Positions 30,506 through 61,038 of a stretch of DNA of 64,000 nt are shown piece after piece. Both the position numbers and the translations under genes were made by a program. The number at the start of each line of letters is the position of its first letter. The first letter of the stretch is position 1. The stretch comes from Iphione sp. A-MEVVRFRX5 (taxonomy: Eukaryota). The notes under the pieces are model-generated. The model saw nothing but the letters and a program-made list of their open reading frames with translations. It did not search any database and was not told the DNA's origin. The stretch spans positions 75,640,001 to 75,704,000 of the forward strand of contig OZ320316.1 in NCBI GenBank assembly GCA_976226885.1, read 5' to 3'.

Positions 30506-31249
30506 AGGTCCAAAATGTGCTGCCGGGAAACGCGGTAGAGGGCGGCGCCAGTTCGTCGTCGCCCGTCACAAACAATGAATACGCTAAGACGTCAGATGAC
30601 GTCACAGAAGACGACCGCCCGAACGATGCGCCCGAGATGGCGACGTTGGAGCCAATCGAGTCGCTCTACAAGGACGAGGAGCTCTCCTGGGACGCCATCT
30701 TCAGGGCCCGCTCGGCCAAACTCCCCCGCCATAAACCACAGTCAGATAACGACGGCTGGGACGACAACGTCATGCTCGGGGACGATCCACGCGCGCACAC
30801 CGTCGACAAGACGCCTGAAAGCGACAGTAATAATATGTACTCGCCCGACGACGGCACCGACGATATGGACGACACCGCCACGACGACGGAGAAGCGCGAC
30901 CGTGACGGTAGGGGGCGCGGCGGGAAGCACAAGGGGCGGGGCGGCCGCAGGAAAAACGGTAAAAAAGGACGCAAGAGCGGACGCAAAAACAAGAACCCAT
31001 CGAAGGGCGTATTGCCTAGTGAGCTGGCCGATTCAGCCACCGTGACGCAGCCCGAAAGGCCCGGTGGTGTCGAGGGAAACGAGGAGACAAGCAACTATAT
31101 CTACGAGGAGACGAAAGCACCGCCCATTAAGTTCACGAGTTGCTCGGAGTTGAGGTGCTATGCGGGAGGGCGCTGTGTACCAGACGAGATGCGCGGAGGT
31201 GTGCGCTGTCAGTGCATGCTCGGCAACACGGGCGAGTTTTGCGAAAAAG
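30506..31249 (+). CDS. EGFLAM: Visible exon 1: low-complexity acidic then basic region plus EGF1 (phase 1/1)
   Basis: Acceptor atattttgcag at 30505, donor G|gtacgg at 31250. Covered by ORF 30517-31347, with high-GC3 codons. Ends [36 protein letters not shown] (six EGF cysteines). Confidence 0.92.
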
Positions 31250-52200: not shown

Positions 52201-55200
52201 TCAACTTAAAGCTCGCTGATTTCGTTTTGGCATTGGCCGCGTTGAATGCACCCGGGGATTAATGCCTTCAGGAACAAAAAAAGGAGCCACCCATAAACGT
52301 GATTATATTTTGGACAGAATTTCAGGAATTTAATTTTTTTCAGTAAAACGAATGCTGACTCGGAAGTGTGTCAAAGTAGAAAAGGGTGAATTACGGGGGA
52401 GGAGCATTATTATCTTTTGTGGTTGGAAAAGGTTATTATCTGGAGTTGTTTGCAGCGGAAAATACGCCCTGACCAAGTATAATGCACATTTCGACCTCTT
52501 TTAATATCCAGTGGTAATCTGTCAAGAGTTATCACATTTGTTCATGTAGTACGAATGGACATGTATTGGTCCAATACCAATTAGAGCAGTCAATAGGAAG
52601 CGATGGAGCTAGGATTCTGTGTCGTGGGACCTGGTTACATAGTAACACTGGCTGTGGGTGGCTGGTGCACGTCATTTATTTATAGCTGACACCTCTACCG
52701 ACGTACGCAATGCTGGATGCTCCCGAAGGAATCCTACTTTCACAGGCATTCATCCAGCCACGCGCAGCGCCCACTTCGTGTTAGGTGCGGTATTCATAAT
52801 GAGCCCAACTGGCGCAGGAAATCGGAATCGAATCACACCTGTTATTTATATATTCGCGAAGTCACTTGGTGTACCTTTCATGACGTTCCGTTGTACTTCT
52901 GTACTATTTGAACAGGCCAGAAGCGTCTTGTACAACAACACTTTCGTGATTTGTGTTATACAGCAAAACAGTGGACTTTCGTAGACTGAACTATTTGCAG
53001 AAGAGCTGCTCGTTCGTTTTACCTTCCTCCCCATTACCTCCCACTAGGTTTATCACGTAGTATATAACCTATACGTGCCGTCTGTATTTTCCCATCTTGG
53101 AGACGGCTGTAAATCAAATGGCGCCAGGTGCAGTTGGACACAGGCGTCGCCCCCTGATGCGAGACCACCTTCCAAATCGCCGAGCGGTCACCCCTGTTTA
53201 AGCTGCCTTGCCGTGTCACCATCGTTGACCCGTTACTGACTCATCATTTGCTCCTCCCTAATCAGACCTGAGGAATGAGGCATGTGCAAGGGCCGCGACA
53301 ATATGGTGGCGGGAGGCCGCAGATTTATAGCGTGCATAACCTGCTTAGGACGGACTGCGCACTATCCAGCCAAGCCCCCTAAGATCTTGTTAGATCACTG
53401 ATTGCTCCGGATGAGATTGGTTCCGATGAGAGTCGCCGACCGGTGCCGCTGCGACGCCTGATATGGGACGGGACCGGAAGCAGCTGTGCGCCTGTGACGC
53501 AGCGACCACTGGCCGTATCAGGACCCATCAGTCAGGCCACCGCTCCTGGCGCGACCTCGTCTGGCAACGGGACAGTGTCAAAACCACCGTTATCTTTGTT
53601 TTGTCCCAAATGACAGGCGACAGGGACCATCTTTTTCGATCCCCGGAAAATTAAATTAGCAAAAAGCTTCTTTCAAAGTTTTCATCATTTCCCGAAAAAT
53701 CCGCCGGTACTTTCTTTCGTGCCCTGTGGGTCTTTAGGAAGCACTTTCATCCCATTTATAGTTCTATGACAGGGTCTTTAAAGTAAACGGCCATTTACTT
53801 AATTTTTCATTGTGCAAATGAATGTATTAAGTGTGCCTTTTACGGTGCTGTAGTGTGACTTATTGAGTTTTAGATAACTTCTGTATGCTTCTGGACCGAT
53901 ACAAACTAAAGAAGTCACTATAGGCATAATTACAACCTCTTGACTTGTGACATCGATACACTACATCACCTCTCCGCGGGGCGGTATCCCAGTGATGAAA
54001 CGTTTTGGCTGCATCTTGTGTCAGTGGGGCAGGTGTAATTTATACAACCAAAGTAACCTTACAAGAAAGCAAGAGCCTTCCTGCCCAGACAGTGTCCACC
54101 GGTATCTTCGGTAATAAGTATGACTACACGCACCTACCATGTCCTAAGGCTCCACGGTTCTCCCCTTCTTCTTGTCGAGTACGCCGACTGCAAACTACCA
54201 ACGGCGCCCCCTGGCGAGGCAGCGGCAGTCGATGGCCGTTCAGGGGACTGATAGCAGTCGTTTGATTGGCCTGCGAGAGTCGAAAGGTGGCGGTCGTCTC
54301 CCGACTGTCGTCTACTTGATAAAAAGAATTTTTAGATAAGCTCTACCGGCAGTAGTAGAATGGTGGAGCCCGACACAAAATGGGATGGCTATTTGGCTCT
54401 CTCGACATCACTGCAGTCGATAAAAGCATCTCAGTGGTATTGCCCTTCTAGGGGCCGCATCTTAATGCAAGAATGCAAGAATAACAGCACAGATTCTGCT
54501 AACCTAAAGCTTGCTACTAATAATGCATGGCACATTTGAAGTGCACATATACTAAATTGCCCTTTAAGTCTAATAGTGCATGAATGAATACATGTATATT
54601 GCAAAGCGGTGCAAATAATATCGAAAAACAAATATGTGTACCTAGTCACTCTGTAGCCTGAGAGTGGATATTCTATCATAGGTTGTCATCAATGAGCGAC
54701 CACTCAAGCTGTTGGAAGAAGCTATTGATGGCGTAAACATCGACAATTGCAATCATCCATGCACGGGTCAGCCATGTCTGAACGGTGGTCGCTGCGTTCC
54801 CATCCGGGACTTCTACAAATGTAGCTGCCCTCTTGGCTTCGAGAATACCAACTGCGAAGACAGTGAGTACAACCAATCCTGATTTCTCTATGTGTGATTA
54901 GCTACTCTGAAGTTCATATTTACTGCGTCTATGAATATCTTTACAAACTGATACTAATCATTATAGAATCAATAGTGATAGACACCGATGACCTGCGGGA
55001 CAAGTTCCTTGTATTCGTTATACATGTGTATTACATATAATATTGTGCATATGTAACCTTCGTGGAAAGGAAATCAATCCGTCGCTCGAAAGAGCACGAG
55101 AAGCATCTCAATTTTTAAGATAGAAATCATACTTATTAATACTAGCAGTGACCTTTCCCGCATCTACAGATACTTAGGTTATCTAACATTTGTGTAACTA

Positions 55201-58200
55201 ATTTTAGTCATTAGATTACTATGTCTCTGTCCACAAAATAATCGTCGTATCTGTGTGTAAATAGTAAACAGTATTCTATGAAGTATCTCTGTTTAGCTTT
55301 TACCAGACACCAAACATGTTATTTGAGGTAATTTGATAGTTAAAATGATTAAAATTAAGCTATATGATGTTAGATGTAGAACTGGATGGCGTTACAGATA
55401 TTTTCAAGATAATTTGATAGTTTAAGGCCTGTATATGCATGTTGTAATAAGTTTAAAGCCTGATTTTCTGTGATCTGTATTAATATCTATGATAGCATAA
55501 GGCATCCAGTTGTAACAATTTGTTTGAAATTATATCATATTCTAGTGCAGTGTTTGGCTGTATGAGGCCTTATAATTGAATGACTCTGTACACTCTGACC
55601 AATTTAATCACTGTATACTCTGTATTACTTCTTCTGCATTACGTCTGCATATAAGTACCTACCAGGTTCCCGGCAGCCTGCAGTCGATGACATCTCAGTT
55701 ATTGTAGACAGCATGCCTAGAGGCGGGTGTTTCTGAGGGCCCCAGAAACACCCTTACCCTCATGCTGGCGCCAGATTTTCAGAGATGTCACCGGCTGTAA
55801 GCATGCCGCTGCCTGGCCTTCTCTAGCGTTGAGGTATTGACTCTGACTCAACTCGAGTTGGATGTAGATTATACTAACACCATCCCTGCATGGTATAACC
55901 TCCCAAGTTTTCCTCTATAGAATAACCCTTCTCCCTCCCACCATGAAACTACAGAGACATCCGCCGTAAACCTGTCAATTTTGGCGAATCTATGGGACGG
56001 ATATCAGTGTTCCTATGTCCGCTGCAGCGTTTCTGCGGTACGACACCTGTACTTTTCGGGTGCCATTGTCACCTCCTCTCCTAAACAAACTAAACGAGAC
56101 ATTATCTTCATGTCGCTGAAATTGTCAGGTCGGTTTACGCCGGTGCCGACGGGATACCTTCTCTAAGGACAAGAACACTGAACACAGATTTGCTCACAAA
56201 CACACTCCAGATACCTTCTCACCCTTTTCCCAATAGTGGCGTCTCCCTCGTGGCTTTAGGGATTGATTCCATTGTGGGATTTTGGGGGTGAGTCGGCATG
56301 TACAACTTGTTTGATCCTGGTCTTTATCTGAGCAAGTCTGTACGTGTTGTAGCCTTTCATAGACTCACTCTCTGCTCCGATCTCACTCGAAACGCATGAG
56401 TGATACTGCAGACCGATGTCACTTTTGTGCTCCGTTTTCTTATTCTCATTTCCTTTGTGAGCTTGGATGGTGATAGCTGTCCTTGCCCGCGGTTGTTTTT
56501 TTCCTTCATTTTCATTTCCTATAACACATTTGATTGCTGTTGGGTTTTGTTAATTGTAATTCTCTTATCGTAGTTGTGAAGCAATTTTCAGAAATTTTGA
56601 AGGCGAAGATGTCCTTACAGCAGCCGACATTTTTGTACTATTTTTTGCAACCGTAAGTGTCGACACTGTCCACTGTTTATACAATGCCTTTTTCGTTTGA
56701 ATAACATTTAAGGCCCATTAAACTTATTTCTGTTCATATTCACTGCCACTGCAGAGGTTTTGGACCGATCTCGGTTTCATTTTGCGCGATCTAGGAGAGG
56801 TCAAAACGTCACTGAGTCTCCAGGTGAAAAAGATGGCAAGACCACGCTTACAAACTAGTTTTCACACTGCACCATCCCCCACCCTTACACGAGTGTGCTT
56901 ACATTATCTTTATTTCAATTACTACGTCCCTCCAGGGAGGGAGGTTTTTATAACTTTGGGTTCAGTATTCTTCTCAGTTCCTTTGACCGTGTTGGCGGCA
57001 TGTGGAGCACGTATATCTGCTGGCCAGTGGACTATTACGCTGTAATGTGCTGCCTCCATGTCGAGAGCAAATTTATGCTTCACTGATGGGCGCCATTATT
57101 GGATCGGATTGAAAAGAGCTCCCGGAAATTGTCCATTTTGATGTTTAATCAAAGACTCAGTTATATTATTTGATCATCTAAATTAATCTTGATGTTTTGT
57201 GGACATCATATTTTACGGGGAGAATGTTTTCGCCATAACGAAACAGTTTCATTTTGACTGCCCTTTTCCCAGAGTTGAAAACACGCAAATTAGGTCATCG
57301 ATTATCAGAATTCCTGCTCTTTCTTAAGAAATACAAATAGTGCTTTTCACCAGAACGTTTGGAAGGGCTTAGGAAATTTGCATTCCACGACAACTATCAT
57401 TAGGAGCACAAAGGGATATCAACACCATCAAGTCTTTACTAACATAACTTGCCCTGTCACTGCATGCCATGTGTGCATGCAAATGTCGTCATAGCAGTGT
57501 TGCGCTTGCCTGGCCTCCTGTCTTTAATATAAGTATGCATTGATTTCCTTCACAATACCACACAGTATAAAACAGGGTATGTGTGATATTAACTACTACA
57601 CTATGGAGATTATATGGTCATTTTACTCTATATTTGTGACCGTGCGCGTATAAAAAATACTCTCCGATGGACGTTTTGGCAAGTGAACCTATTTCTAACC
57701 TCAGTTGGAGGGACCTCATGCTTTATATAGAACTCCGCCAGGGGTCGTAATTGTTTGGTTTAGAGTGGTCCCCCGTCATGCTCATCTCCTGTAAAATTTC
57801 ACATTGCCTTACATTTCTGAATAGGCAAAGAAGTCTTTTTAAGTGAGCCTGGTCCCTCCACTGAGCTCTTGTCACTGTGTTTGTGATTGTCCATGCGAGT
57901 AGACCTGGTGAGCGTGTGAAGTGCTGCTGCTCCCGCTGCCTCCCTCCGCCAAGCGCCGCCAGGCGTCGCCAGTGTTGCTCACCGCCTGCCTCCGTGCGGG
58001 GCGACCGTGGTGTCTGACGGTGTTGCCACCTGGTTGTTGTCCCCCGCACCACACTAATGCTTGTCACTTGGTTTTGTTTTCACTCCTCACTTGCCTTGCA
58101 TGCCATCGTATGGTGGAAAATGAACAGGGAAAGCCCGCAGAGGTATGTGCTCAGTTCATCGACTGCAGCCCGCCCAGTTTCTTTGTCCAAGTATACTTAT

Positions 58201-61038
58201 ATTGCGGCCTCGCTCTGGCCATCGCACACTTCTACCGACTCCTCTCTGTGCCCAGACCCGGAACACATGCAGACACAAACACAACACCCAGACCTCATCC
58301 CTACTTTAGGATGACCATACACTGGACCCCCCTCGTCCTTCCTGCCCCCGTAGGGTCGGTAAGGGTGCACATAGGGTGAAGCCGACAGGCATAAACCGGA
58401 GGCATGCTCGCCAAATTCGCACCAGGTGTAGCCTCACATGGCACGCCCTCTTAGATATTTAATAGGGAGTCCTTTGCACTGAGTGGTTCGTTAACACACT
58501 AGTTCATTTAAGAATCTTAGTACTTCTCCCTGTCTTCATACAAGGATGCATCAGTGTTGTAAAGCAGTAAATATCATCATATAGCAGTATGTATCTTTAC
58601 CCTCTTTCCAAAATACCTGCGTCTGTAATCGGACACGATATCTAACATGAAAGAACATGTACATTGCATGGATTTCCATAATGAATTAATCTATTGCTTA
58701 TAGAGTAATAACATGTATAAACGCCCTGCTAATCCTGATTTCTAACCATTTAGGTTTAAGTGTAGGATTGATAACACCCCATTTTCGGGTGTGCCTATAG
58801 CATGCTACTCTATCCTCAGTAGTCCATTCTATAGGTTGGGTGTGTGCTTGGACGCGCCTCCTCTGGTCCCTCCTGGGCGAGACCCACTCTGTGTCCTCCC
58901 TTACCGACCACCACAGACAGTAGTTCTGGGCCTATTGTGCGTTTATTCGTTATAACACGGCTGGGATGTGCTAATATATAATAAGTGTTTGATGGGGAAA
59001 AAGCACCTCCAGCACTTCAGTTCAACAATCCTTTTTAATAGTTTGCTTGTAATATCTAGCCCTATTAAAGAAATATGGGATTATTTTGATATTGAGTGAG
59101 TTTTATATTGGGTTCGTATTTATTTCTACTTAACTGCGTTCTTTTCATTCTAAGTCACTTTCGCTGCAGTTCTCTTCCAAATCCAAGCAAATGTAAGGGT
59201 TGATGGGCAACTGCTCAGCACTTTGAAAGCTCATGATAATTGGCGGCGACCTATCGGTGGAGGACACCAAACGTTACACATCCCAGCCGGCCTGTTTCCC
59301 TTGCAGCCCGCCTGCCCATGAGTGTAATCAATCAGCACGTTTGACGCTAACACTGTGTGCCTGTCCCGTTATACAGAGCTCCAGGAGCCCATCCGCATCC
59401 CGATGTTCTCCGGAGAGAGTTATCTGGCCTACGTCGACCCCTTCATAATGCAAAGGTAAGTGGGGCGCTGCAGCCTAAAATAACCAAACGCCCGTATTGA
59501 TGATGCGCACTTTAAAGGAACTTACATAAGTGTATATCAACATGTACTTGTAGCCCCCATGTATCCACTATTTTGGTAGCTTAATTCTGATTGAAACGTT
59601 AGTTTGTCTCAGTTCTCTGTGATGTTAAAATGCTCATTTACGCTTACTTTAACCCTAACCCCCTCCCCCCGGGTTGCAGACCATTGTCGGTACCCTAATC
59701 TAATGATACGTTTAGTTTTAGTAGCAGTAGTTTTATTGAATGTCAATAGCGCCAGATAAAATTGTCGAAATATATATCAACAGCCTCCAGTAAGAATTTT
59801 AACACAAACATCCAGTCCGGTATTTGAGGCAGTTAACAATGGAAGCGATTTGAATTTAACCCATAACTCCTAGGGTGCGTGGAAAGAAGATCGATATCCA
59901 AATGAAGATCCGAGCCATGGGACCGGAAGGCCTTCTCTTCTGGACCGGCGAGGAGAAGATGACGTCATCCAGCGACTTCCTGTCCCTCGGGATCAGGGAA
60001 GGTCATGTGCAGTTTAGCTACAACCTTGGCAGTGGGGAGGCTGTTATAATCTATAACGAGAGCCGGATAGATGATGGCAATTGGCACAAGATTAGGGCTC
60101 AAAGGTTGGTGCAGTTAATTGCTTGATGGTATNNNNNNNNNNNNNNNNNNNNNNNNNNNNNNNNNNNNNNNNNNNNNNNNNNNNNNNNNNNNNNNNNNNN
60201 NNNNNNNNNNNNNNNNNNNNNNNNNNNNNNNNNNNNNNNNNNNNNNNNNNNNNNNNNNNNNNNNTGCGTCTATTGTCTAGAAAACGTGTACATGTATATT
60301 CATACCAGTGTCCATACTAGCTCCGAGAGTGACTAAAAAAGATAAGCTTACAATTTAGGCAAGTCTTTTAGCATTCTGTAGTCCATGCATATTCTTAGTC
60401 ATCTACTTATTTTCGATTTGCCTAGATACGAGCGCATCGGCTACTTGGAGATTGACGGCACCGAGGTCATTGAGGGTGCCTCGCCTGGTCCTCTGAAACA
60501 ACTTAACACTCAGAGCAAGCTCTATGTTGGTAAGTTACAGGTCATACGTTGGAGTGTACCTTTTACGTCTTGTATTACAGTCCGTCGCCACAGCAATGGA
60601 AGTTTCCGTTCAGCCACGCCTAGCATCTTCATCTTTGAAAGAGTGTCAACGGATGCTTCTTTTAACGTACATTGTACAAGATACAGGAAATGTTATACAC
60701 ATAACAATACAGTATGGTATAAATGTCATTTACATCAAAAGACGTTTTGTACATTCTCAGCAGATACAAGTATAAAATGCCGGTTTAGCGACCTTAAAAA
60801 CTTGTTAGGGATATGTTGTGCTCTTAATTTGCGGCCATGTCCAGTATTCTCTAAATGTTTAATTCTGATGTGGCAATTTGATATTTTAGGAGGCATGGAG
60901 GACATTGTTTTATCAACCAAGAAGAAATTCAAGAGTGGTTTCGTGGGTTGCGTGTCCAATATCACGCTGGCGACAGACTATCACATTGATCTCATCGGCG
61001 AAGCCGCCGAAGGCCAAAACATCCAACAGTGCTCATAG
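30506..61038 (+). CDS. EGFLAM: Pikachurin/EGFLAM orthologue, spliced and 5'-incomplete: join(30506-31249,39096-39297,47048-47192,47669-47861,50050-50175,51088-51191,51420-51553,51873-52101,54682-54862,59377-59455,59874-60104,60426-60529,60890-61038)
   Basis: All 12 introns are GT-AG with matching phases. The joined exons total 2621 nt (2 nt of a split codon plus 873 codons including TAG). Domain order EGF-LG-EGF-LG-EGF-LG and motifs ([78 protein letters not shown]) match my recollection of vertebrate pikachurin better than agrin or perlecan. No database search was run. Confidence 0.93.
35657..35669 (-). promoter_or_regulatory. CTCF-like motif, exact match to CCRSYAGRKGGCR
   Basis: Reverse complement reads CCACTAGATGGCA. 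Motif match only. Confidence 0.45.
37173..37244. repeat. 36-bp tandem duplication (2 copies, 1 mismatch)
   Basis: catatgtacatgtatgcatcta(a/g)ttaaatgcatatc twice. Each copy contains TACATGTA and a tgcat...atgca inverted pair. Confidence 0.9.
37959..38153 (-). mobile_element. Decayed L2/CR1-group LINE, 3' end of ORF2
   Basis: Minus strand reads [46 protein letters not shown], resembling the TR..LP..T....GP.LWN.LP......FK..LK C-terminal pattern of these LINEs. In-frame stop. Pattern recognition only. Confidence 0.5.
38932..38949. repeat. (AT)9 microsatellite
   Basis: Read directly. Confidence 0.9.
39096..39297 (+). CDS. EGFLAM: Exon 2: N-terminal part of LamG1 (phase 1/2)
   Basis: Acceptor ttcctttctgtag, donor AG|gtaagc. 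Encodes [68 protein letters not shown]. Confidence 0.95.
47048..47192 (+). CDS. EGFLAM: Exon 3: middle of LamG1 (phase 2/0)
   Basis: Acceptor ttttgtttcaaatccag, donor AAG|gtcagc. Encodes [48 protein letters not shown]. Confidence 0.95.
47669..47861 (+). CDS. EGFLAM: Exon 4: C-terminal part of LamG1 (phase 0/1)
   Basis: Acceptor ttttattctcttgcag, donor G|gtacgt. Encodes [17 protein letters not shown]...[13 protein letters not shown]...GDAIHGVDV. Confidence 0.95.
48941..48943 (+). CDS. EGFLAM: Candidate 3-nt alternative microexon (phase 1/1) between LamG1 and EGF2
   Basis: ctaac...ttgttttgtgctttttgtcatcacag|AAG|gtacgt. Would add one Glu. The donor hexamer is identical to that of exon 4. No transcript evidence. 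Confidence 0.5.
50050..50175 (+). CDS. EGFLAM: Exon 5: EGF2 (phase 1/1)
   Basis: Acceptor gcttaacag, donor A|gtaagt. Encodes [42 protein letters not shown]. Confidence 0.95.
50351..50430. repeat. Alternating purine/pyrimidine tract followed by a GA-rich microsatellite (inside the MITE)
   Basis: atgtgtgcgtgcatgcgtgcatgtgtgtatg, then (GA/GAAA/GACA)n at 50389-50430. Confidence 0.85.
50433..50555. repeat. Minisatellite, 41-bp unit x3 (inside the MITE)
   Basis: tttttcatggagtttgaagca(t/g)at(t/c)ggtggaaattgtg(t/c)(g/a)g starting at 50433, 50474 and 50515. Confidence 0.95.
51088..51191 (+). CDS. EGFLAM: Exon 6: start of LamG2 (phase 1/0); not in the ORF track
   Basis: Acceptor cactcttgcag, donor AAG|gtaatt. 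Encodes [35 protein letters not shown]; its 104 nt exactly bridge the phases of exons 5 and 7. Confidence 0.9.
51420..51553 (+). CDS. EGFLAM: Exon 7: LamG2 (phase 0/2)
   Basis: Acceptor ctccttttcgatgccag, donor AG|gtgggg. Encodes [45 protein letters not shown]. Confidence 0.95.
51873..52101 (+). CDS. EGFLAM: Exon 8: LamG2 (phase 2/0)
   Basis: Acceptor ctttattcctatag, donor AAG|gtgtgt. Encodes [29 protein letters not shown]...[12 protein letters not shown]...FVGCIQK. Confidence 0.95.
54204..54217 (-). promoter_or_regulatory. CTCF-like motif (1 mismatch)
   Basis: Reverse complement reads TCGCCAGGGGGCGC. Motif match only. Confidence 0.45.
54682..54862 (+). CDS. EGFLAM: Exon 9: end of LamG2 plus EGF3 (phase 0/1); not in the ORF track on this strand
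   Basis: Acceptor attctatcatag, donor A|gtgagt. Encodes [60 protein letters not shown]. Confidence 0.95.
58128..58142 (+). CDS. EGFLAM: Candidate 15-nt alternative microexon (phase 1/1) between EGF3 and LamG3
   Basis: aacag|GGAAAGCCCGCAGAG|gtatgt. Upstream there is no AG for 153 nt, an ACTAAT branch-point motif at 58053, a pyrimidine tract and clustered TGC. Frame-preserving with no stop. No transcript evidence. Confidence 0.5.
59377..59455 (+). CDS. EGFLAM: Exon 10: start of LamG3 (phase 1/2)
   Basis: Acceptor cctgtcccgttatacag, donor AG|gtaagt. Encodes [27 protein letters not shown]. Confidence 0.92.
59874..60104 (+). CDS. EGFLAM: Exon 11: LamG3 (phase 2/2)
   Basis: Acceptor cataactcctag, donor AG|gttggt. 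Encodes [54 protein letters not shown]...[11 protein letters not shown]. Confidence 0.95.
60133..60264. other. Assembly gap (132 N) in intron 11
   Basis: Run of N. The flanking exons still join in frame. Confidence 1.
60426..60529 (+). CDS. EGFLAM: Exon 12: LamG3 (phase 2/1)
   Basis: Acceptor tttcgatttgcctag, donor G|gtaagt. Encodes [34 protein letters not shown]. Confidence 0.95.
60890..61038 (+). CDS. EGFLAM: Exon 13: coding part of the terminal exon, LamG3 C-terminus and TAG stop
   Basis: Acceptor tttgatattttag. Encodes [49 protein letters not shown] followed by TAG at 61036-61038. Confidence 0.95.

What the first reader, a model, noticed from the sequence alone, without database searches (positions are those of the whole stretch)
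58128..58142. Candidate 15-nt microexon inserting a basic RKARR motif at the EGF3/LamG3 junction
Seen: cag|GGAAAGCCCGCAGAG|gtatgt in the phase-1 intron 54863-59376. Upstream are a 153-nt AG-free zone (57973-58125), ACTAAT at 58053-58058, a T/C tract and three TGC motifs in ttgccttgcatgcc. Inclusion changes ...NCED-K-LQEP to ...NCED-RKARRE-LQEP (+5 aa, no stop). Established: Srrm3/4 (eMIC)-dependent neural microexons carry UGC motifs near the 3' splice site. Agrin's neuron-specific z/B inserts lie at the corresponding last-EGF/LG3 region, and its basic KSRK y insert confers heparin binding. From memory (verify), mammalian EGFLAM has isoforms differing by 8 residues at this junction. Inference: an ancient splicing switch that adds an XBBXBX heparin-binding-like or RXXR convertase-like site next to LG3. 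Weakness: the 24 nt just before the AG are purine-rich.
Basis: partly seen in the sequence, partly recalled or inferred. Interest (0 to 1): 0.8.

Follow-up and report, generated by a model that had tools for sequence, protein, structure and literature searches.

The report
Conserved 15-base microexon in worm pikachurin
A 15-base mini-exon hidden in an intron of an annelid worm's pikachurin (synapse matrix protein) gene is real by comparative evidence: five related genomes keep its length, splice sites and RKARR peptide. It has the flanks typical of neuron-regulated microexons, but no RNA data could be obtained.

Summary
On its own it is weak, because the 4.5-kb intron holds 86 frame-preserving AG..GT candidates. 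Comparison settles it. Four other genomic contigs of related, annelid-like species carry a 15-nt exon at the same phase-1 junction. AG, GT and length are kept, and the peptide RKARR(+E) is invariant. All six variable nucleotide sites are synonymous, although third codon positions of the neighbouring exon are near saturation. The annelid Dimorphilus has an annotated 15-nt exon at this position (IRTRR). No counterpart was found in Owenia, Helobdella, Lingula or a mussel-like genome.

The upstream intron has a CUAAY branch point 41-72 nt away, an AG-free zone of 76-153 nt and UGC motifs. This matches the published code of eMIC (Srrm)-dependent microexons. UGCAUG, which I recall as the Rbfox motif, is invariant in the five.

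Vertebrates (8 aa, ECGNYCLN) and amphioxus (26-27 aa) have unrelated alternative inserts at the same junction.

Not shown: transcription, tissue specificity and the effect on the protein. The likeliest function is a splice-delivered basic, convertase-type site in the EGF3-LG3 linker. A second candidate cassette exon (56755-56823) carries RSRR. The scan holds no earlier report of this exon.

The parts
54682..54862 (+). Exon 9: end of LamG2 linker plus EGF3, ends in phase 1 (...NCED + A)
   Evidence: Pfam EGF, E 2e-08. Donor ACA|gtgagt. Aligned exon in relatives is 83-97% identical at protein level.
57973..58125 (+). AG exclusion zone (153 nt) upstream of the microexon acceptor
   Evidence: No AG in the region. 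Matching zones in relatives are 76-107 nt, against 13-44 nt at constitutive acceptors.
58054..58058 (+). Candidate distal branch point CTAAT (CUAAY), about 70 nt upstream of the exon
   Evidence: CUAAY lies 63-72 nt upstream in the five worm loci and 41 nt upstream in Dimorphilus. CUAAY is the branch-point consensus used in PMC8797185.
58090..58104 (+). UGC cluster CTTGCCTTGCATGCC, containing UGCAUG
   Evidence: TGCCTTG...TGCATG is present in all five loci. A 29-nt stretch around it is 100% identical between the window and L001. It is single-copy in the window.
58126..58127 (+). 3' splice site AG of the microexon (weak, purine-rich approach)
   Evidence: AG is kept in all five loci and in Dimorphilus.
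58128..58142 (+). 15-nt microexon GGAAAGCCCGCAGAG; with the split codons it encodes R-K-A-R-R-(E)
   Evidence: Same length, phase and peptide in L001, L006, L007 and L002. Six variable sites, all synonymous. Dimorphilus has an annotated 15-nt exon here, IRTRR.
58143..58148 (+). 5' splice site GTATGT
   Evidence: PWM score 8.6, second best of the 86 candidates and above the flanking constitutive donor at 6.9. GT is kept in all loci.
59377..59457 (+). Exon 10: rest of the EGF3-LG3 linker and first strand of LamG3 ([16 protein letters not shown]...)
   Evidence: Acceptor tatacag|AG. Orthologous exon found in L001, L002, L006, L007 and L008.
59874..60104 (+). Exon 11: N-terminal half of LamG3
   Evidence: Pfam Laminin_G_1, E 1.5e-16. 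Boundaries read.
56755..56823 (+). Second candidate cassette exon in the same intron (69 nt; [23 protein letters not shown])
   Evidence: Conserved with L001 5134-5208 (75 nt). Acceptor, CAG|gtga donor and frame are kept, with an in-frame 6-nt indel and 5 synonymous versus 3 conservative changes in the first 45 nt. Not found in L006, L007 or L002.

Best explanation
Window 58128-58142 is a genuine 15-nt coding microexon of an annelid-type pikachurin (EGFLAM-like) gene. It lies in the ancient phase-1 intron between the EGF3 exon and the first LamG3 exon. Inclusion replaces one Lys by R-K-A-R-R-E, adding a five-residue basic block to the 12-residue EGF3-LG3 linker. Skipping keeps the frame and gives the linker length seen across Bilateria.

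Shown here: the exon's length, splice sites and peptide are under purifying selection in five deeply diverged genomes, and a 15-nt counterpart is annotated as an exon in Dimorphilus.

Inferred, about 60%: it is alternative and neuron-enriched. It would be recognised through a distal CUAAY branch point, a long AG-free zone and UGC motifs bound by an Srrm234/eMIC-type activator, possibly modulated by Rbfox at the invariant UGCAUG.

Inferred, about 45%: the selected feature is a (K/R)-x-R-R dibasic site for a furin-type proprotein convertase in an exposed linker, so that splicing decides whether LG3 can be cut off from EGF3/LG2. The alternative, about 35%, is a cationic patch that changes binding to sulfated or acidic glycans or to the dystroglycan/receptor partners of LG2-LG3.
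For: - The best-conserved block of the whole intron between the window and L001 is 58052-58152 (84% over 101 nt, E 2e-22).
- L001, L006, L007 and L002 all have AG|15 nt|GT at the same junction, and all encode RKARR + E.
- The six variable exon sites are all synonymous. The chance of that for 6 neutral changes is about 2e-4.
- Third codon positions of exon 9 are only 45-53% identical, so synonymous sites are near saturation.
- Dimorphilus gyrociliatus has ccccag|TCCGAACGAGAAGAG|gtaagg at the same phase-1 junction. All three annotated models at that locus include it. That annotation gave transcript assemblies weight 10 (PMC7854359).
- Cis code: AG-free zones of 76-153 nt against 13-44 nt at constitutive acceptors, CUAAY 41-72 nt upstream, and 2-3 UGC in the last 50 nt (1 in Dimorphilus). 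This matches the eMIC-exon architecture described in PMC8797185.
- The nearest full-length relative, a spliced JGI transcript (L009/P0179), is the skipped form, and 12-residue linkers are the rule in other phyla.
- R-x-R-R recurs: RTRR in Dimorphilus, and RSRR/RARR in the second candidate exon of the window and L001.
- In the AlphaFold model the insert lies in the least confident stretch between EGF3 and LG3, pLDDT 79 against about 92 on either side.
Against: - No RNA evidence for this species or its close relatives. No sequencing run was listed, and no spliced inclusion junction was found in metagenome contigs; the two hits there were chance matches in bacterial pyruvate-kinase-like ORFs.
- Alternative versus constitutive use is not shown. 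All three Dimorphilus models include the exon.
- The polypyrimidine tract is weak and UCUC motifs are absent in the window, L001 and L006.
- RKARR is only a minimal or near-consensus furin motif (RKAR or KARR).
- The invariant UGCAUG upstream of an exon would, by the usual Rbfox position rule (from memory), repress rather than activate.
- No counterpart was found in Owenia, Helobdella, Lingula or a mytilid-like bivalve.
Confidence: 0.85

Rival explanations
1. Chance pseudo-exon: an AG..GT pair that happens to be in frame and is never spliced in.
For: 86 such frame-preserving candidates exist in this one intron. The acceptor has a poor polypyrimidine tract. No RNA support was obtained.
Against: Length, AG, GT and the peptide are kept in five genomes whose introns are otherwise unalignable, and every nucleotide difference is synonymous. 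An annotated counterpart exists in Dimorphilus.
Confidence: 0.03
2. A conserved non-coding intronic element (splicing silencer or enhancer, or another regulatory RNA or DNA site) that only looks like an exon.
For: The most strongly conserved stretch is the intronic UGC/UGCAUG block, not the exon itself: 29 nt are 100% identical between the window and L001.
Against: Within the 15 nt, changes fall at the third positions of the first four codons and at Arg first positions (C/A), which is a coding signature. Splice dinucleotides and exact length are kept. No Rfam family matches.
Confidence: 0.05
3. A real exon, but constitutive in these worms: simply part of the annelid linker, not a regulated switch.
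For: All three Dimorphilus models include it. No transcript of a species known to carry the exon shows skipping.
Against: A distal branch point, a long AG-free zone, a weak acceptor and strongly conserved flanking intron are hallmarks of regulated microexons. The closest spliced transcript available (L009) is the skipped form. The skipped form reproduces the ancestral 12-residue linker.
Confidence: 0.25
4. Regulated mainly by Rbfox (UGCAUG), not by Srrm/eMIC; the three 'UGC' are by-products of a Fox site. This rival concerns the regulator only and is compatible with the best explanation.
For: UGCAUG is invariant in all five worm loci, 13-24 nt upstream of the exon.
Against: Dimorphilus keeps the exon without UGCAUG, with only one UGC. 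A second UGC (CUGCCUUG) is equally invariant. The AG-free zone and CUAAY fit the eMIC code.
Confidence: 0.3

Closest known systems
Vertebrate EGFLAM/pikachurin 24-nt alternative exon (ECGNYCLN)
   Same: Same gene family, same EGF3/LG3 junction and same intron phase (phase 1). The split codon changes from A to E...T on inclusion, as K changes to R...E here. Isoforms with and without it occur in fish and reptiles. A solved pikachurin chain, PDB 8D1B, carries it.
   Different: 24 nt instead of 15. The insert is acidic or neutral with two cysteines, not basic, and shows no sequence similarity. I could not fetch vertebrate introns to compare the flanks. Homology of the two exons is therefore not established and independent origin is more likely.
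eMIC (Srrm3/4, invertebrate Srrm234)-dependent neural microexons
   Same: Length of 27 nt or less, frame-preserving, weak 3' splice site, long AG exclusion zone, UGC motifs close to the acceptor, CUAAY branch point, and strong conservation of flanking intron.
   Different: Neural inclusion and Srrm dependence are untested. UCUC-rich tracts are seen only in L007, L002 and Dimorphilus.
Agrin A/y insert KSRK (in LG2) and B/z inserts (in LG3)
   Same: Short, neuron-regulated inserts in an EGF-LG array that change glycan and receptor binding. KSRK is a four-residue basic block that creates a heparin site and lowers alpha-dystroglycan binding (PMC6450144).
   Different: KSRK is described as sitting in a loop inside LG2 (PMC6450144) and the z inserts as lying in LG3 (PMC10067498). 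The RKARR block is in the inter-domain linker, eight residues before the first LG3 strand. Agrin is a different gene.
Neurotrypsin cleavage of agrin releasing the 22-kDa C-terminal fragment
   Same: A basic-residue cleavage site that frees a C-terminal fragment as a separate product (PMC10067498). That this fragment is LG3, cut between the last EGF and LG3, is from my memory. It is the model for what a splice-delivered R-x-R-R site could do here.
   Different: In agrin the site is constitutive and cut by a dedicated synaptic protease. Here cleavage is only a hypothesis, and the site would be supplied by splicing.
Dimorphilus gyrociliatus pikachurin-like models CAD5125297-9
   Same: A 15-nt exon at the identical junction and phase, with the x-R-x-R-R peptide and a CTAAT branch point plus UGC upstream.
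   Different: The peptide is IRTRR+D, there is no UGCAUG, and the introns are tiny (about 85 nt). It is annotated, but I found no description of it in the papers I read.

Membership tests
eMIC/Srrm-dependent neural microexon | Very short (3-27 nt), frame-preserving cassette exon | tested here: met
   15 nt, phase 1 to phase 1, no stop. Same in five other loci.
eMIC/Srrm-dependent neural microexon | Long AG exclusion zone with a distal, strong CUAAY branch point | tested here: met
   AG-free zones of 76-153 nt against 13-44 nt at flanking constitutive acceptors. CUAAY lies 41-72 nt upstream in all six loci. Criterion taken from PMC8797185.
eMIC/Srrm-dependent neural microexon | [quoted passage not shown] | tested here: met
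   2-3 UGC in the last 50 nt in the five worm loci and 1 in Dimorphilus. CUGCCUUG..UGCAUG is invariant.
eMIC/Srrm-dependent neural microexon | Long CU-rich (UCUC) polypyrimidine tract | tested here: inconclusive
   UCUC/CUCU count is 3 in L007, L002 and Dimorphilus but 0 in the window, L001 and L006. Pyrimidine fraction is 0.58-0.80.
eMIC/Srrm-dependent neural microexon | Neural-specific inclusion that depends on Srrm234/eMIC | not testable with these tools
   No sequencing run was listed for the exon or the locus, so read laying could not be used.
Pikachurin (EGFLAM) orthologue | C-terminal EGF-LG-EGF-LG-EGF-LG array, with nearest named relatives being pikachurin | tested here: met
   Pfam EGF and Laminin_G on the exons. 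Exon chain 31105-61035 aligned to pikachurin-like proteins. The best named hits are mostly pikachurin or pikachurin-like from molluscs to vertebrates.
Pikachurin (EGFLAM) orthologue | Two N-terminal FN3 domains | tested here: inconclusive
   No FN3 was found upstream in the window by tblastn. Two mollusc relatives (P0012, P0010) and the unnamed P0077 show no fn3 in Pfam, whereas pikachurin P0023 does. The 5' end of the gene may lie outside the window.
Same exon as the vertebrate EGFLAM ECGNYCLN microexon | Same intron position and phase | tested here: met
   Isoform pairs HCQK-A... against HCQK-ECGNYCLN-T... imply a phase-1, 24-nt cassette at the EGF3/LG3 junction.
Same exon as the vertebrate EGFLAM ECGNYCLN microexon | Recognisable similarity of length or sequence | tested here: not met
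   15 against 24 nt, and RKARR against ECGNYCLN. No counterpart was found in Owenia, Lingula or a mytilid-like bivalve. Amphioxus has an unrelated 26-27 aa insert.
Furin-type proprotein convertase site | R-x-[K/R]-R in an exposed segment of a secreted protein | tested here: inconclusive
   Canonical in Dimorphilus (RTRR) and in the second candidate exon (RSRR, RARR). Only RKAR/KARR in the 15-nt exon. Linker pLDDT is 79 against about 92 around it. Cleavage itself is not testable here.
Cardin-Weintraub heparin-binding motif XBBXBX | Pattern of basic residues | tested here: inconclusive
   D-R-K-A-R-R-E reads X-B-B-X-B-B-X, which is close to but not exactly XBBXBX. Binding was not tested.

The most novel reading that the evidence does not exclude
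The EGF3-LG3 linker of pikachurin is a recurrent tuning point. Vertebrates, amphioxus and annelids each evolved their own alternative cassette in the same ancient phase-1 intron. In annelids the cassettes (the 15-nt RKARR/IRTRR exon, and a 69-75-nt exon with RSRR/RARR) would deliver a convertase site. Neuron-specific splicing would then decide whether LG3 is shed as a free fragment, as with agrin's 22-kDa fragment, instead of staying tethered to the dystroglycan-binding LG2.
Probability: 0.25. Interest if true: 0.7.

Novelty: new member of a known kind. Interest (0 to 1): 0.5.

Why it matters
Pikachurin positions the dystroglycan complex and a postsynaptic receptor at photoreceptor synapses. 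In that system LG2+LG3 bind alpha-dystroglycan and LG3 binds GPR179 (PMC12679428).

A deeply conserved, probably neuron-regulated microexon that places a dibasic block exactly between EGF3 and LG3 gives a concrete, testable handle on how the LG2-LG3 unit is regulated outside vertebrates.

Three phyla place unrelated alternative cassettes in the same intron. That is a clean case for studying convergent evolution of splice-controlled linkers. It also adds an annelid example with the full cis-regulatory signature to the eMIC microexon programme. The fly-mammal comparison I read (PMC8797185) does not mention annelids.

Tried and rejected
1. RNA evidence. The look-up of sequencing runs with exon 9 alone (kind rna) and with 54600-59500 (kind any) listed no run, so read laying was never possible.

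2. Spliced inclusion junction as a degenerate DNA pattern in metagenome contigs. The first pattern gave 0 hits. The broader one gave 2 hits, both chance matches inside bacterial pyruvate-kinase-like ORFs.

3. Proteins with the insert. The word searches with exon 11, with an alignment carrying the junction peptide, and with P0179 residues 600-878, plus the representative search, returned no protein with RKARR at the junction. Only Dimorphilus has IRTRR. The annelid transcripts closest to the window are simply not in the collection, apart from the skipped-form JGI transcript.

4. Rejected the internal AG (a 9-nt exon starting at 58134). It is in frame only in the window and would give 10 nt in L001 and L006.

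5. Rejected an ncRNA reading: no Rfam match and the element is single-copy.

6. Looked for the exon in Owenia (422-nt intron), Helobdella (about 115-nt intron), Lingula and mytilid-like contigs. Nothing convincing was found.

7. The N run at 60133-60264 was left untouched. No contig looked human.
Full report
**Observation**

The sequence is exactly as described. The motif cag|GGAAAGCCCGCAGAG|gtatgt lies at 58125-58148. The intron 54863-59376 is phase 1: exon 9 ends GAAGACA and exon 10 starts AGCTCCAG. Inclusion turns NCED-K-LQEP into NCED-RKARRE-LQEP. The stretch 57973-58125 has no AG, ACTAAT lies at 58053-58058, and three TGC lie in 58091-58104.

By itself this is not significant. The intron holds 86 frame-preserving, stop-free AG..GT candidates of 3-51 nt. 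This one has the second-best donor score (8.6, against 6.9 for the constitutive exon-9 donor).

**The gene**

Pfam finds EGF and Laminin_G on the flanking exons. Alignment of pikachurin-like proteins to the window gives the chain EGF1 (about 31105-31248), LG1, EGF2, LG2, EGF3 (54682-54862), and LG3 (59377-59457, 59874-60104, then an N run that I left alone, then two further LG3 segments ending at about 61035).

The best named relatives are mostly pikachurin or pikachurin-like, from molluscs to vertebrates. FN3 domains were not found in the window. Two mollusc relatives also show none in Pfam, unlike pikachurin P0023, which has fn3 and the pikachurin EGF domain.

A gene tree groups the window with four unnamed contigs, a JGI transcript and the leech Helobdella (support 91/70, drawn open). 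It places L003/L004 with Mytilus. This agrees with earlier notes of this scan that the genome is annelid.

**RNA evidence**

A degenerate pattern for the spliced inclusion junction found nothing relevant in metagenome contigs.

**Comparative evidence**

A word search with exon 11 returned exon-sized fragments from ENA and Logan assemblies, and their contigs were fetched.

- Between the window and L001 (exon 9 is 97% identical at protein level), the best-conserved block of the whole intron is 58052-58152 (84%, E 2e-22).
- L001 reads aag|GGAAGGCGCGGCGAG|gtacgt.
- L006 reads aag|GAAAGGCCCGCCGAG|gtatgt.
- L007 and L002 read cag|GAAAGGCCAGGCGAG|gtacag.
- In all five loci exon 9 ends in phase 1 with A and the exon is 15 nt. 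The product is RKARR plus a Glu formed with exon 10.
- Six of the 15 positions vary and every change is synonymous (AGG/AGA, AAA/AAG, GCC/GCG, CGC/CGG/AGG, AGA/CGA). Six random changes would all be silent about 2 times in 10,000.
- These genomes are far apart. Third codon positions of exon 9 are only 45-53% identical, and L002/L007 share nothing else alignable in the intron.

This is the signature of a translated exon.

**An annotated counterpart**

Among 120 listed orthologues the EGF3-LG3 linker is almost always 10-12 residues. Dimorphilus gyrociliatus has 17, CED-IRTRR-D-IGG. Its genomic locus shows ccccag|TCCGAACGAGAAGAG|gtaagg, a separate 15-nt exon after an intron of about 85 nt, with exon 9 again ending in phase 1 with A. 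All three annotated models at that locus include it. That annotation weighted transcript assemblies ten-fold (PMC7854359), so the exon is probably RNA-supported. That last step is an inference.

**Where no counterpart was found**

- Owenia: the intron is 422 nt with no candidate.
- Helobdella: the intron is about 115 nt.
- Lingula: no convincing candidate.
- Mytilid-like L003/L004: none.

The nearest full-length relative is a spliced JGI transcript (L009). It is the skipped form, NCED-P-IREP.

**Splicing signals**

Measured against the flanking constitutive acceptors, the microexon acceptors have:

- AG-free zones of 76-153 nt, against 13-44 nt;
- a single CUAAY 63-72 nt upstream (41 nt in Dimorphilus);
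- 2-3 UGC in the last 50 nt (1 in Dimorphilus).

The block CACTCCTCACTTGCCTTGCATGCCATCGT is 100% identical between the window and L001, although four of the 15 exon bases differ between them.

This matches the published description of eMIC-dependent exons: long AG exclusion zones, UGC near the 3' splice site, strong CUAAY branch points and very weak acceptors (PMC8797185).

Two caveats apply. UCUC tracts are seen in only half of the loci. The invariant hexamer is UGCAUG, which I recall as the Rbfox motif, so Rbfox may co-regulate or be the main regulator.

**Same junction in other phyla**

- Vertebrate pikachurins occur as HCQK-AVMEAIE and as HCQK-ECGNYCLN-TVMEAIE.
- A solved pikachurin chain, PDB 8D1B, carries the insert.
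- Amphioxus X1 and X2 isoforms differ by 26-27 residues at the same point.

The inserts are unrelated in sequence and length. I read this as reuse of one ancient phase-1 intron, not as one ancient exon.

**Function (inference)**

The insert lies eight residues before the first LG3 strand. In an AlphaFold model of the Dimorphilus EGF3-LG3 segment it falls in the least confident part of the linker (block pLDDT 79 against about 92; mean 88).

LG2+LG3 bind alpha-dystroglycan and LG3 binds GPR179 in vertebrates (PMC12679428; PMC6450144).

The conserved feature is x-[K/R]-x-R-R followed by an acidic and then an aliphatic residue. Dimorphilus has the canonical R-T-R-R.

A second candidate cassette exon in the same intron, seen in passing, carries R-S-R-R in the window (56755-56823, 69 nt) and R-A-R-R in L001 (5134-5208, 75 nt). 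Acceptor, donor and frame are kept, and there is an in-frame indel.

I therefore favour a splice-delivered convertase site that could free LG3, by analogy with the neurotrypsin-released 22-kDa agrin fragment (PMC10067498). A basic glycan-binding patch like agrin's KSRK is the second option. Neither was tested.

**Verdict**

This is a real, conserved, previously undescribed but ordinary-in-kind microexon: a new member of the neural-type microexon class in an annelid pikachurin gene.

- Confidence that it is a genuine coding exon: about 0.85-0.9.
- That it is alternative and neural: about 0.6.
- That it is a convertase site: about 0.45.

Noticed in passing
window 56755-56823; L001 5134-5208: Second candidate cassette exon in the same intron: 69 nt in the window ([23 protein letters not shown]) and 75 nt in L001 (KVLDRSRLYFARARRGPNANATEPP). 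The acceptor cactgccactgcag, the donor CAG|gtga and the frame are kept, with an in-frame 6-nt indel. Both carry a canonical R-x-R-R and an N-x-T sequon. It was not found in L006, L007 or L002.
   Followed up: partly
proteins P0246, P0248, P0254 against P0239, P0244, P0256; PDB 8D1B chain D: Vertebrate pikachurin isoforms differ by ECGNYCLN (8 aa, two cysteines) at the same EGF3/LG3 junction. The solved pikachurin EGF3-LG3 chain contains the insert.
   Followed up: partly
proteins P0327, P0331, P0332 against P0212, P0326, P0334 (Branchiostoma): Amphioxus pikachurin-like isoforms X1 and X2 differ by a 26-27-residue insert (AKVPVVVTQ...APAP) at the same junction. This is a third, unrelated alternative cassette in this intron position.
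   Followed up: no
window 59340-59376; L001 upstream of 9144: The acceptor of the exon downstream of the microexon has a CUAAY branch point 26-27 nt upstream in the window and L001. PMC8797185 reports an unusually strong downstream branch point for fly eMIC exons.
   Followed up: no
window 55726-55763 and 56182-56282: Further short intronic blocks conserved with L001 (89% over 38 nt and 73% over 104 nt). Their nature is unknown.
   Followed up: no
window 60133-60264: A 132-base N run lies 29 nt after the exon-11 donor, in the intron inside LamG3. It was left as it is.
   Followed up: no
L001-L008 (ENA ERZ... and Logan assemblies): Contigs filed under metagenome assemblies carry animal (annelid-like and mytilid-like) pikachurin genes with introns. 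They are presumably host or environmental animal DNA in those samples, and they were useful as unannotated relatives.
   Followed up: partly
cluster of P0185: The 90% cluster of Mytilus pikachurin-like proteins also holds ferric-chelate reductase 1-like / cytochrome b561 proteins. They are probably linked through a 1405-aa model (P0379), which may be a fusion of neighbouring genes.
   Followed up: no
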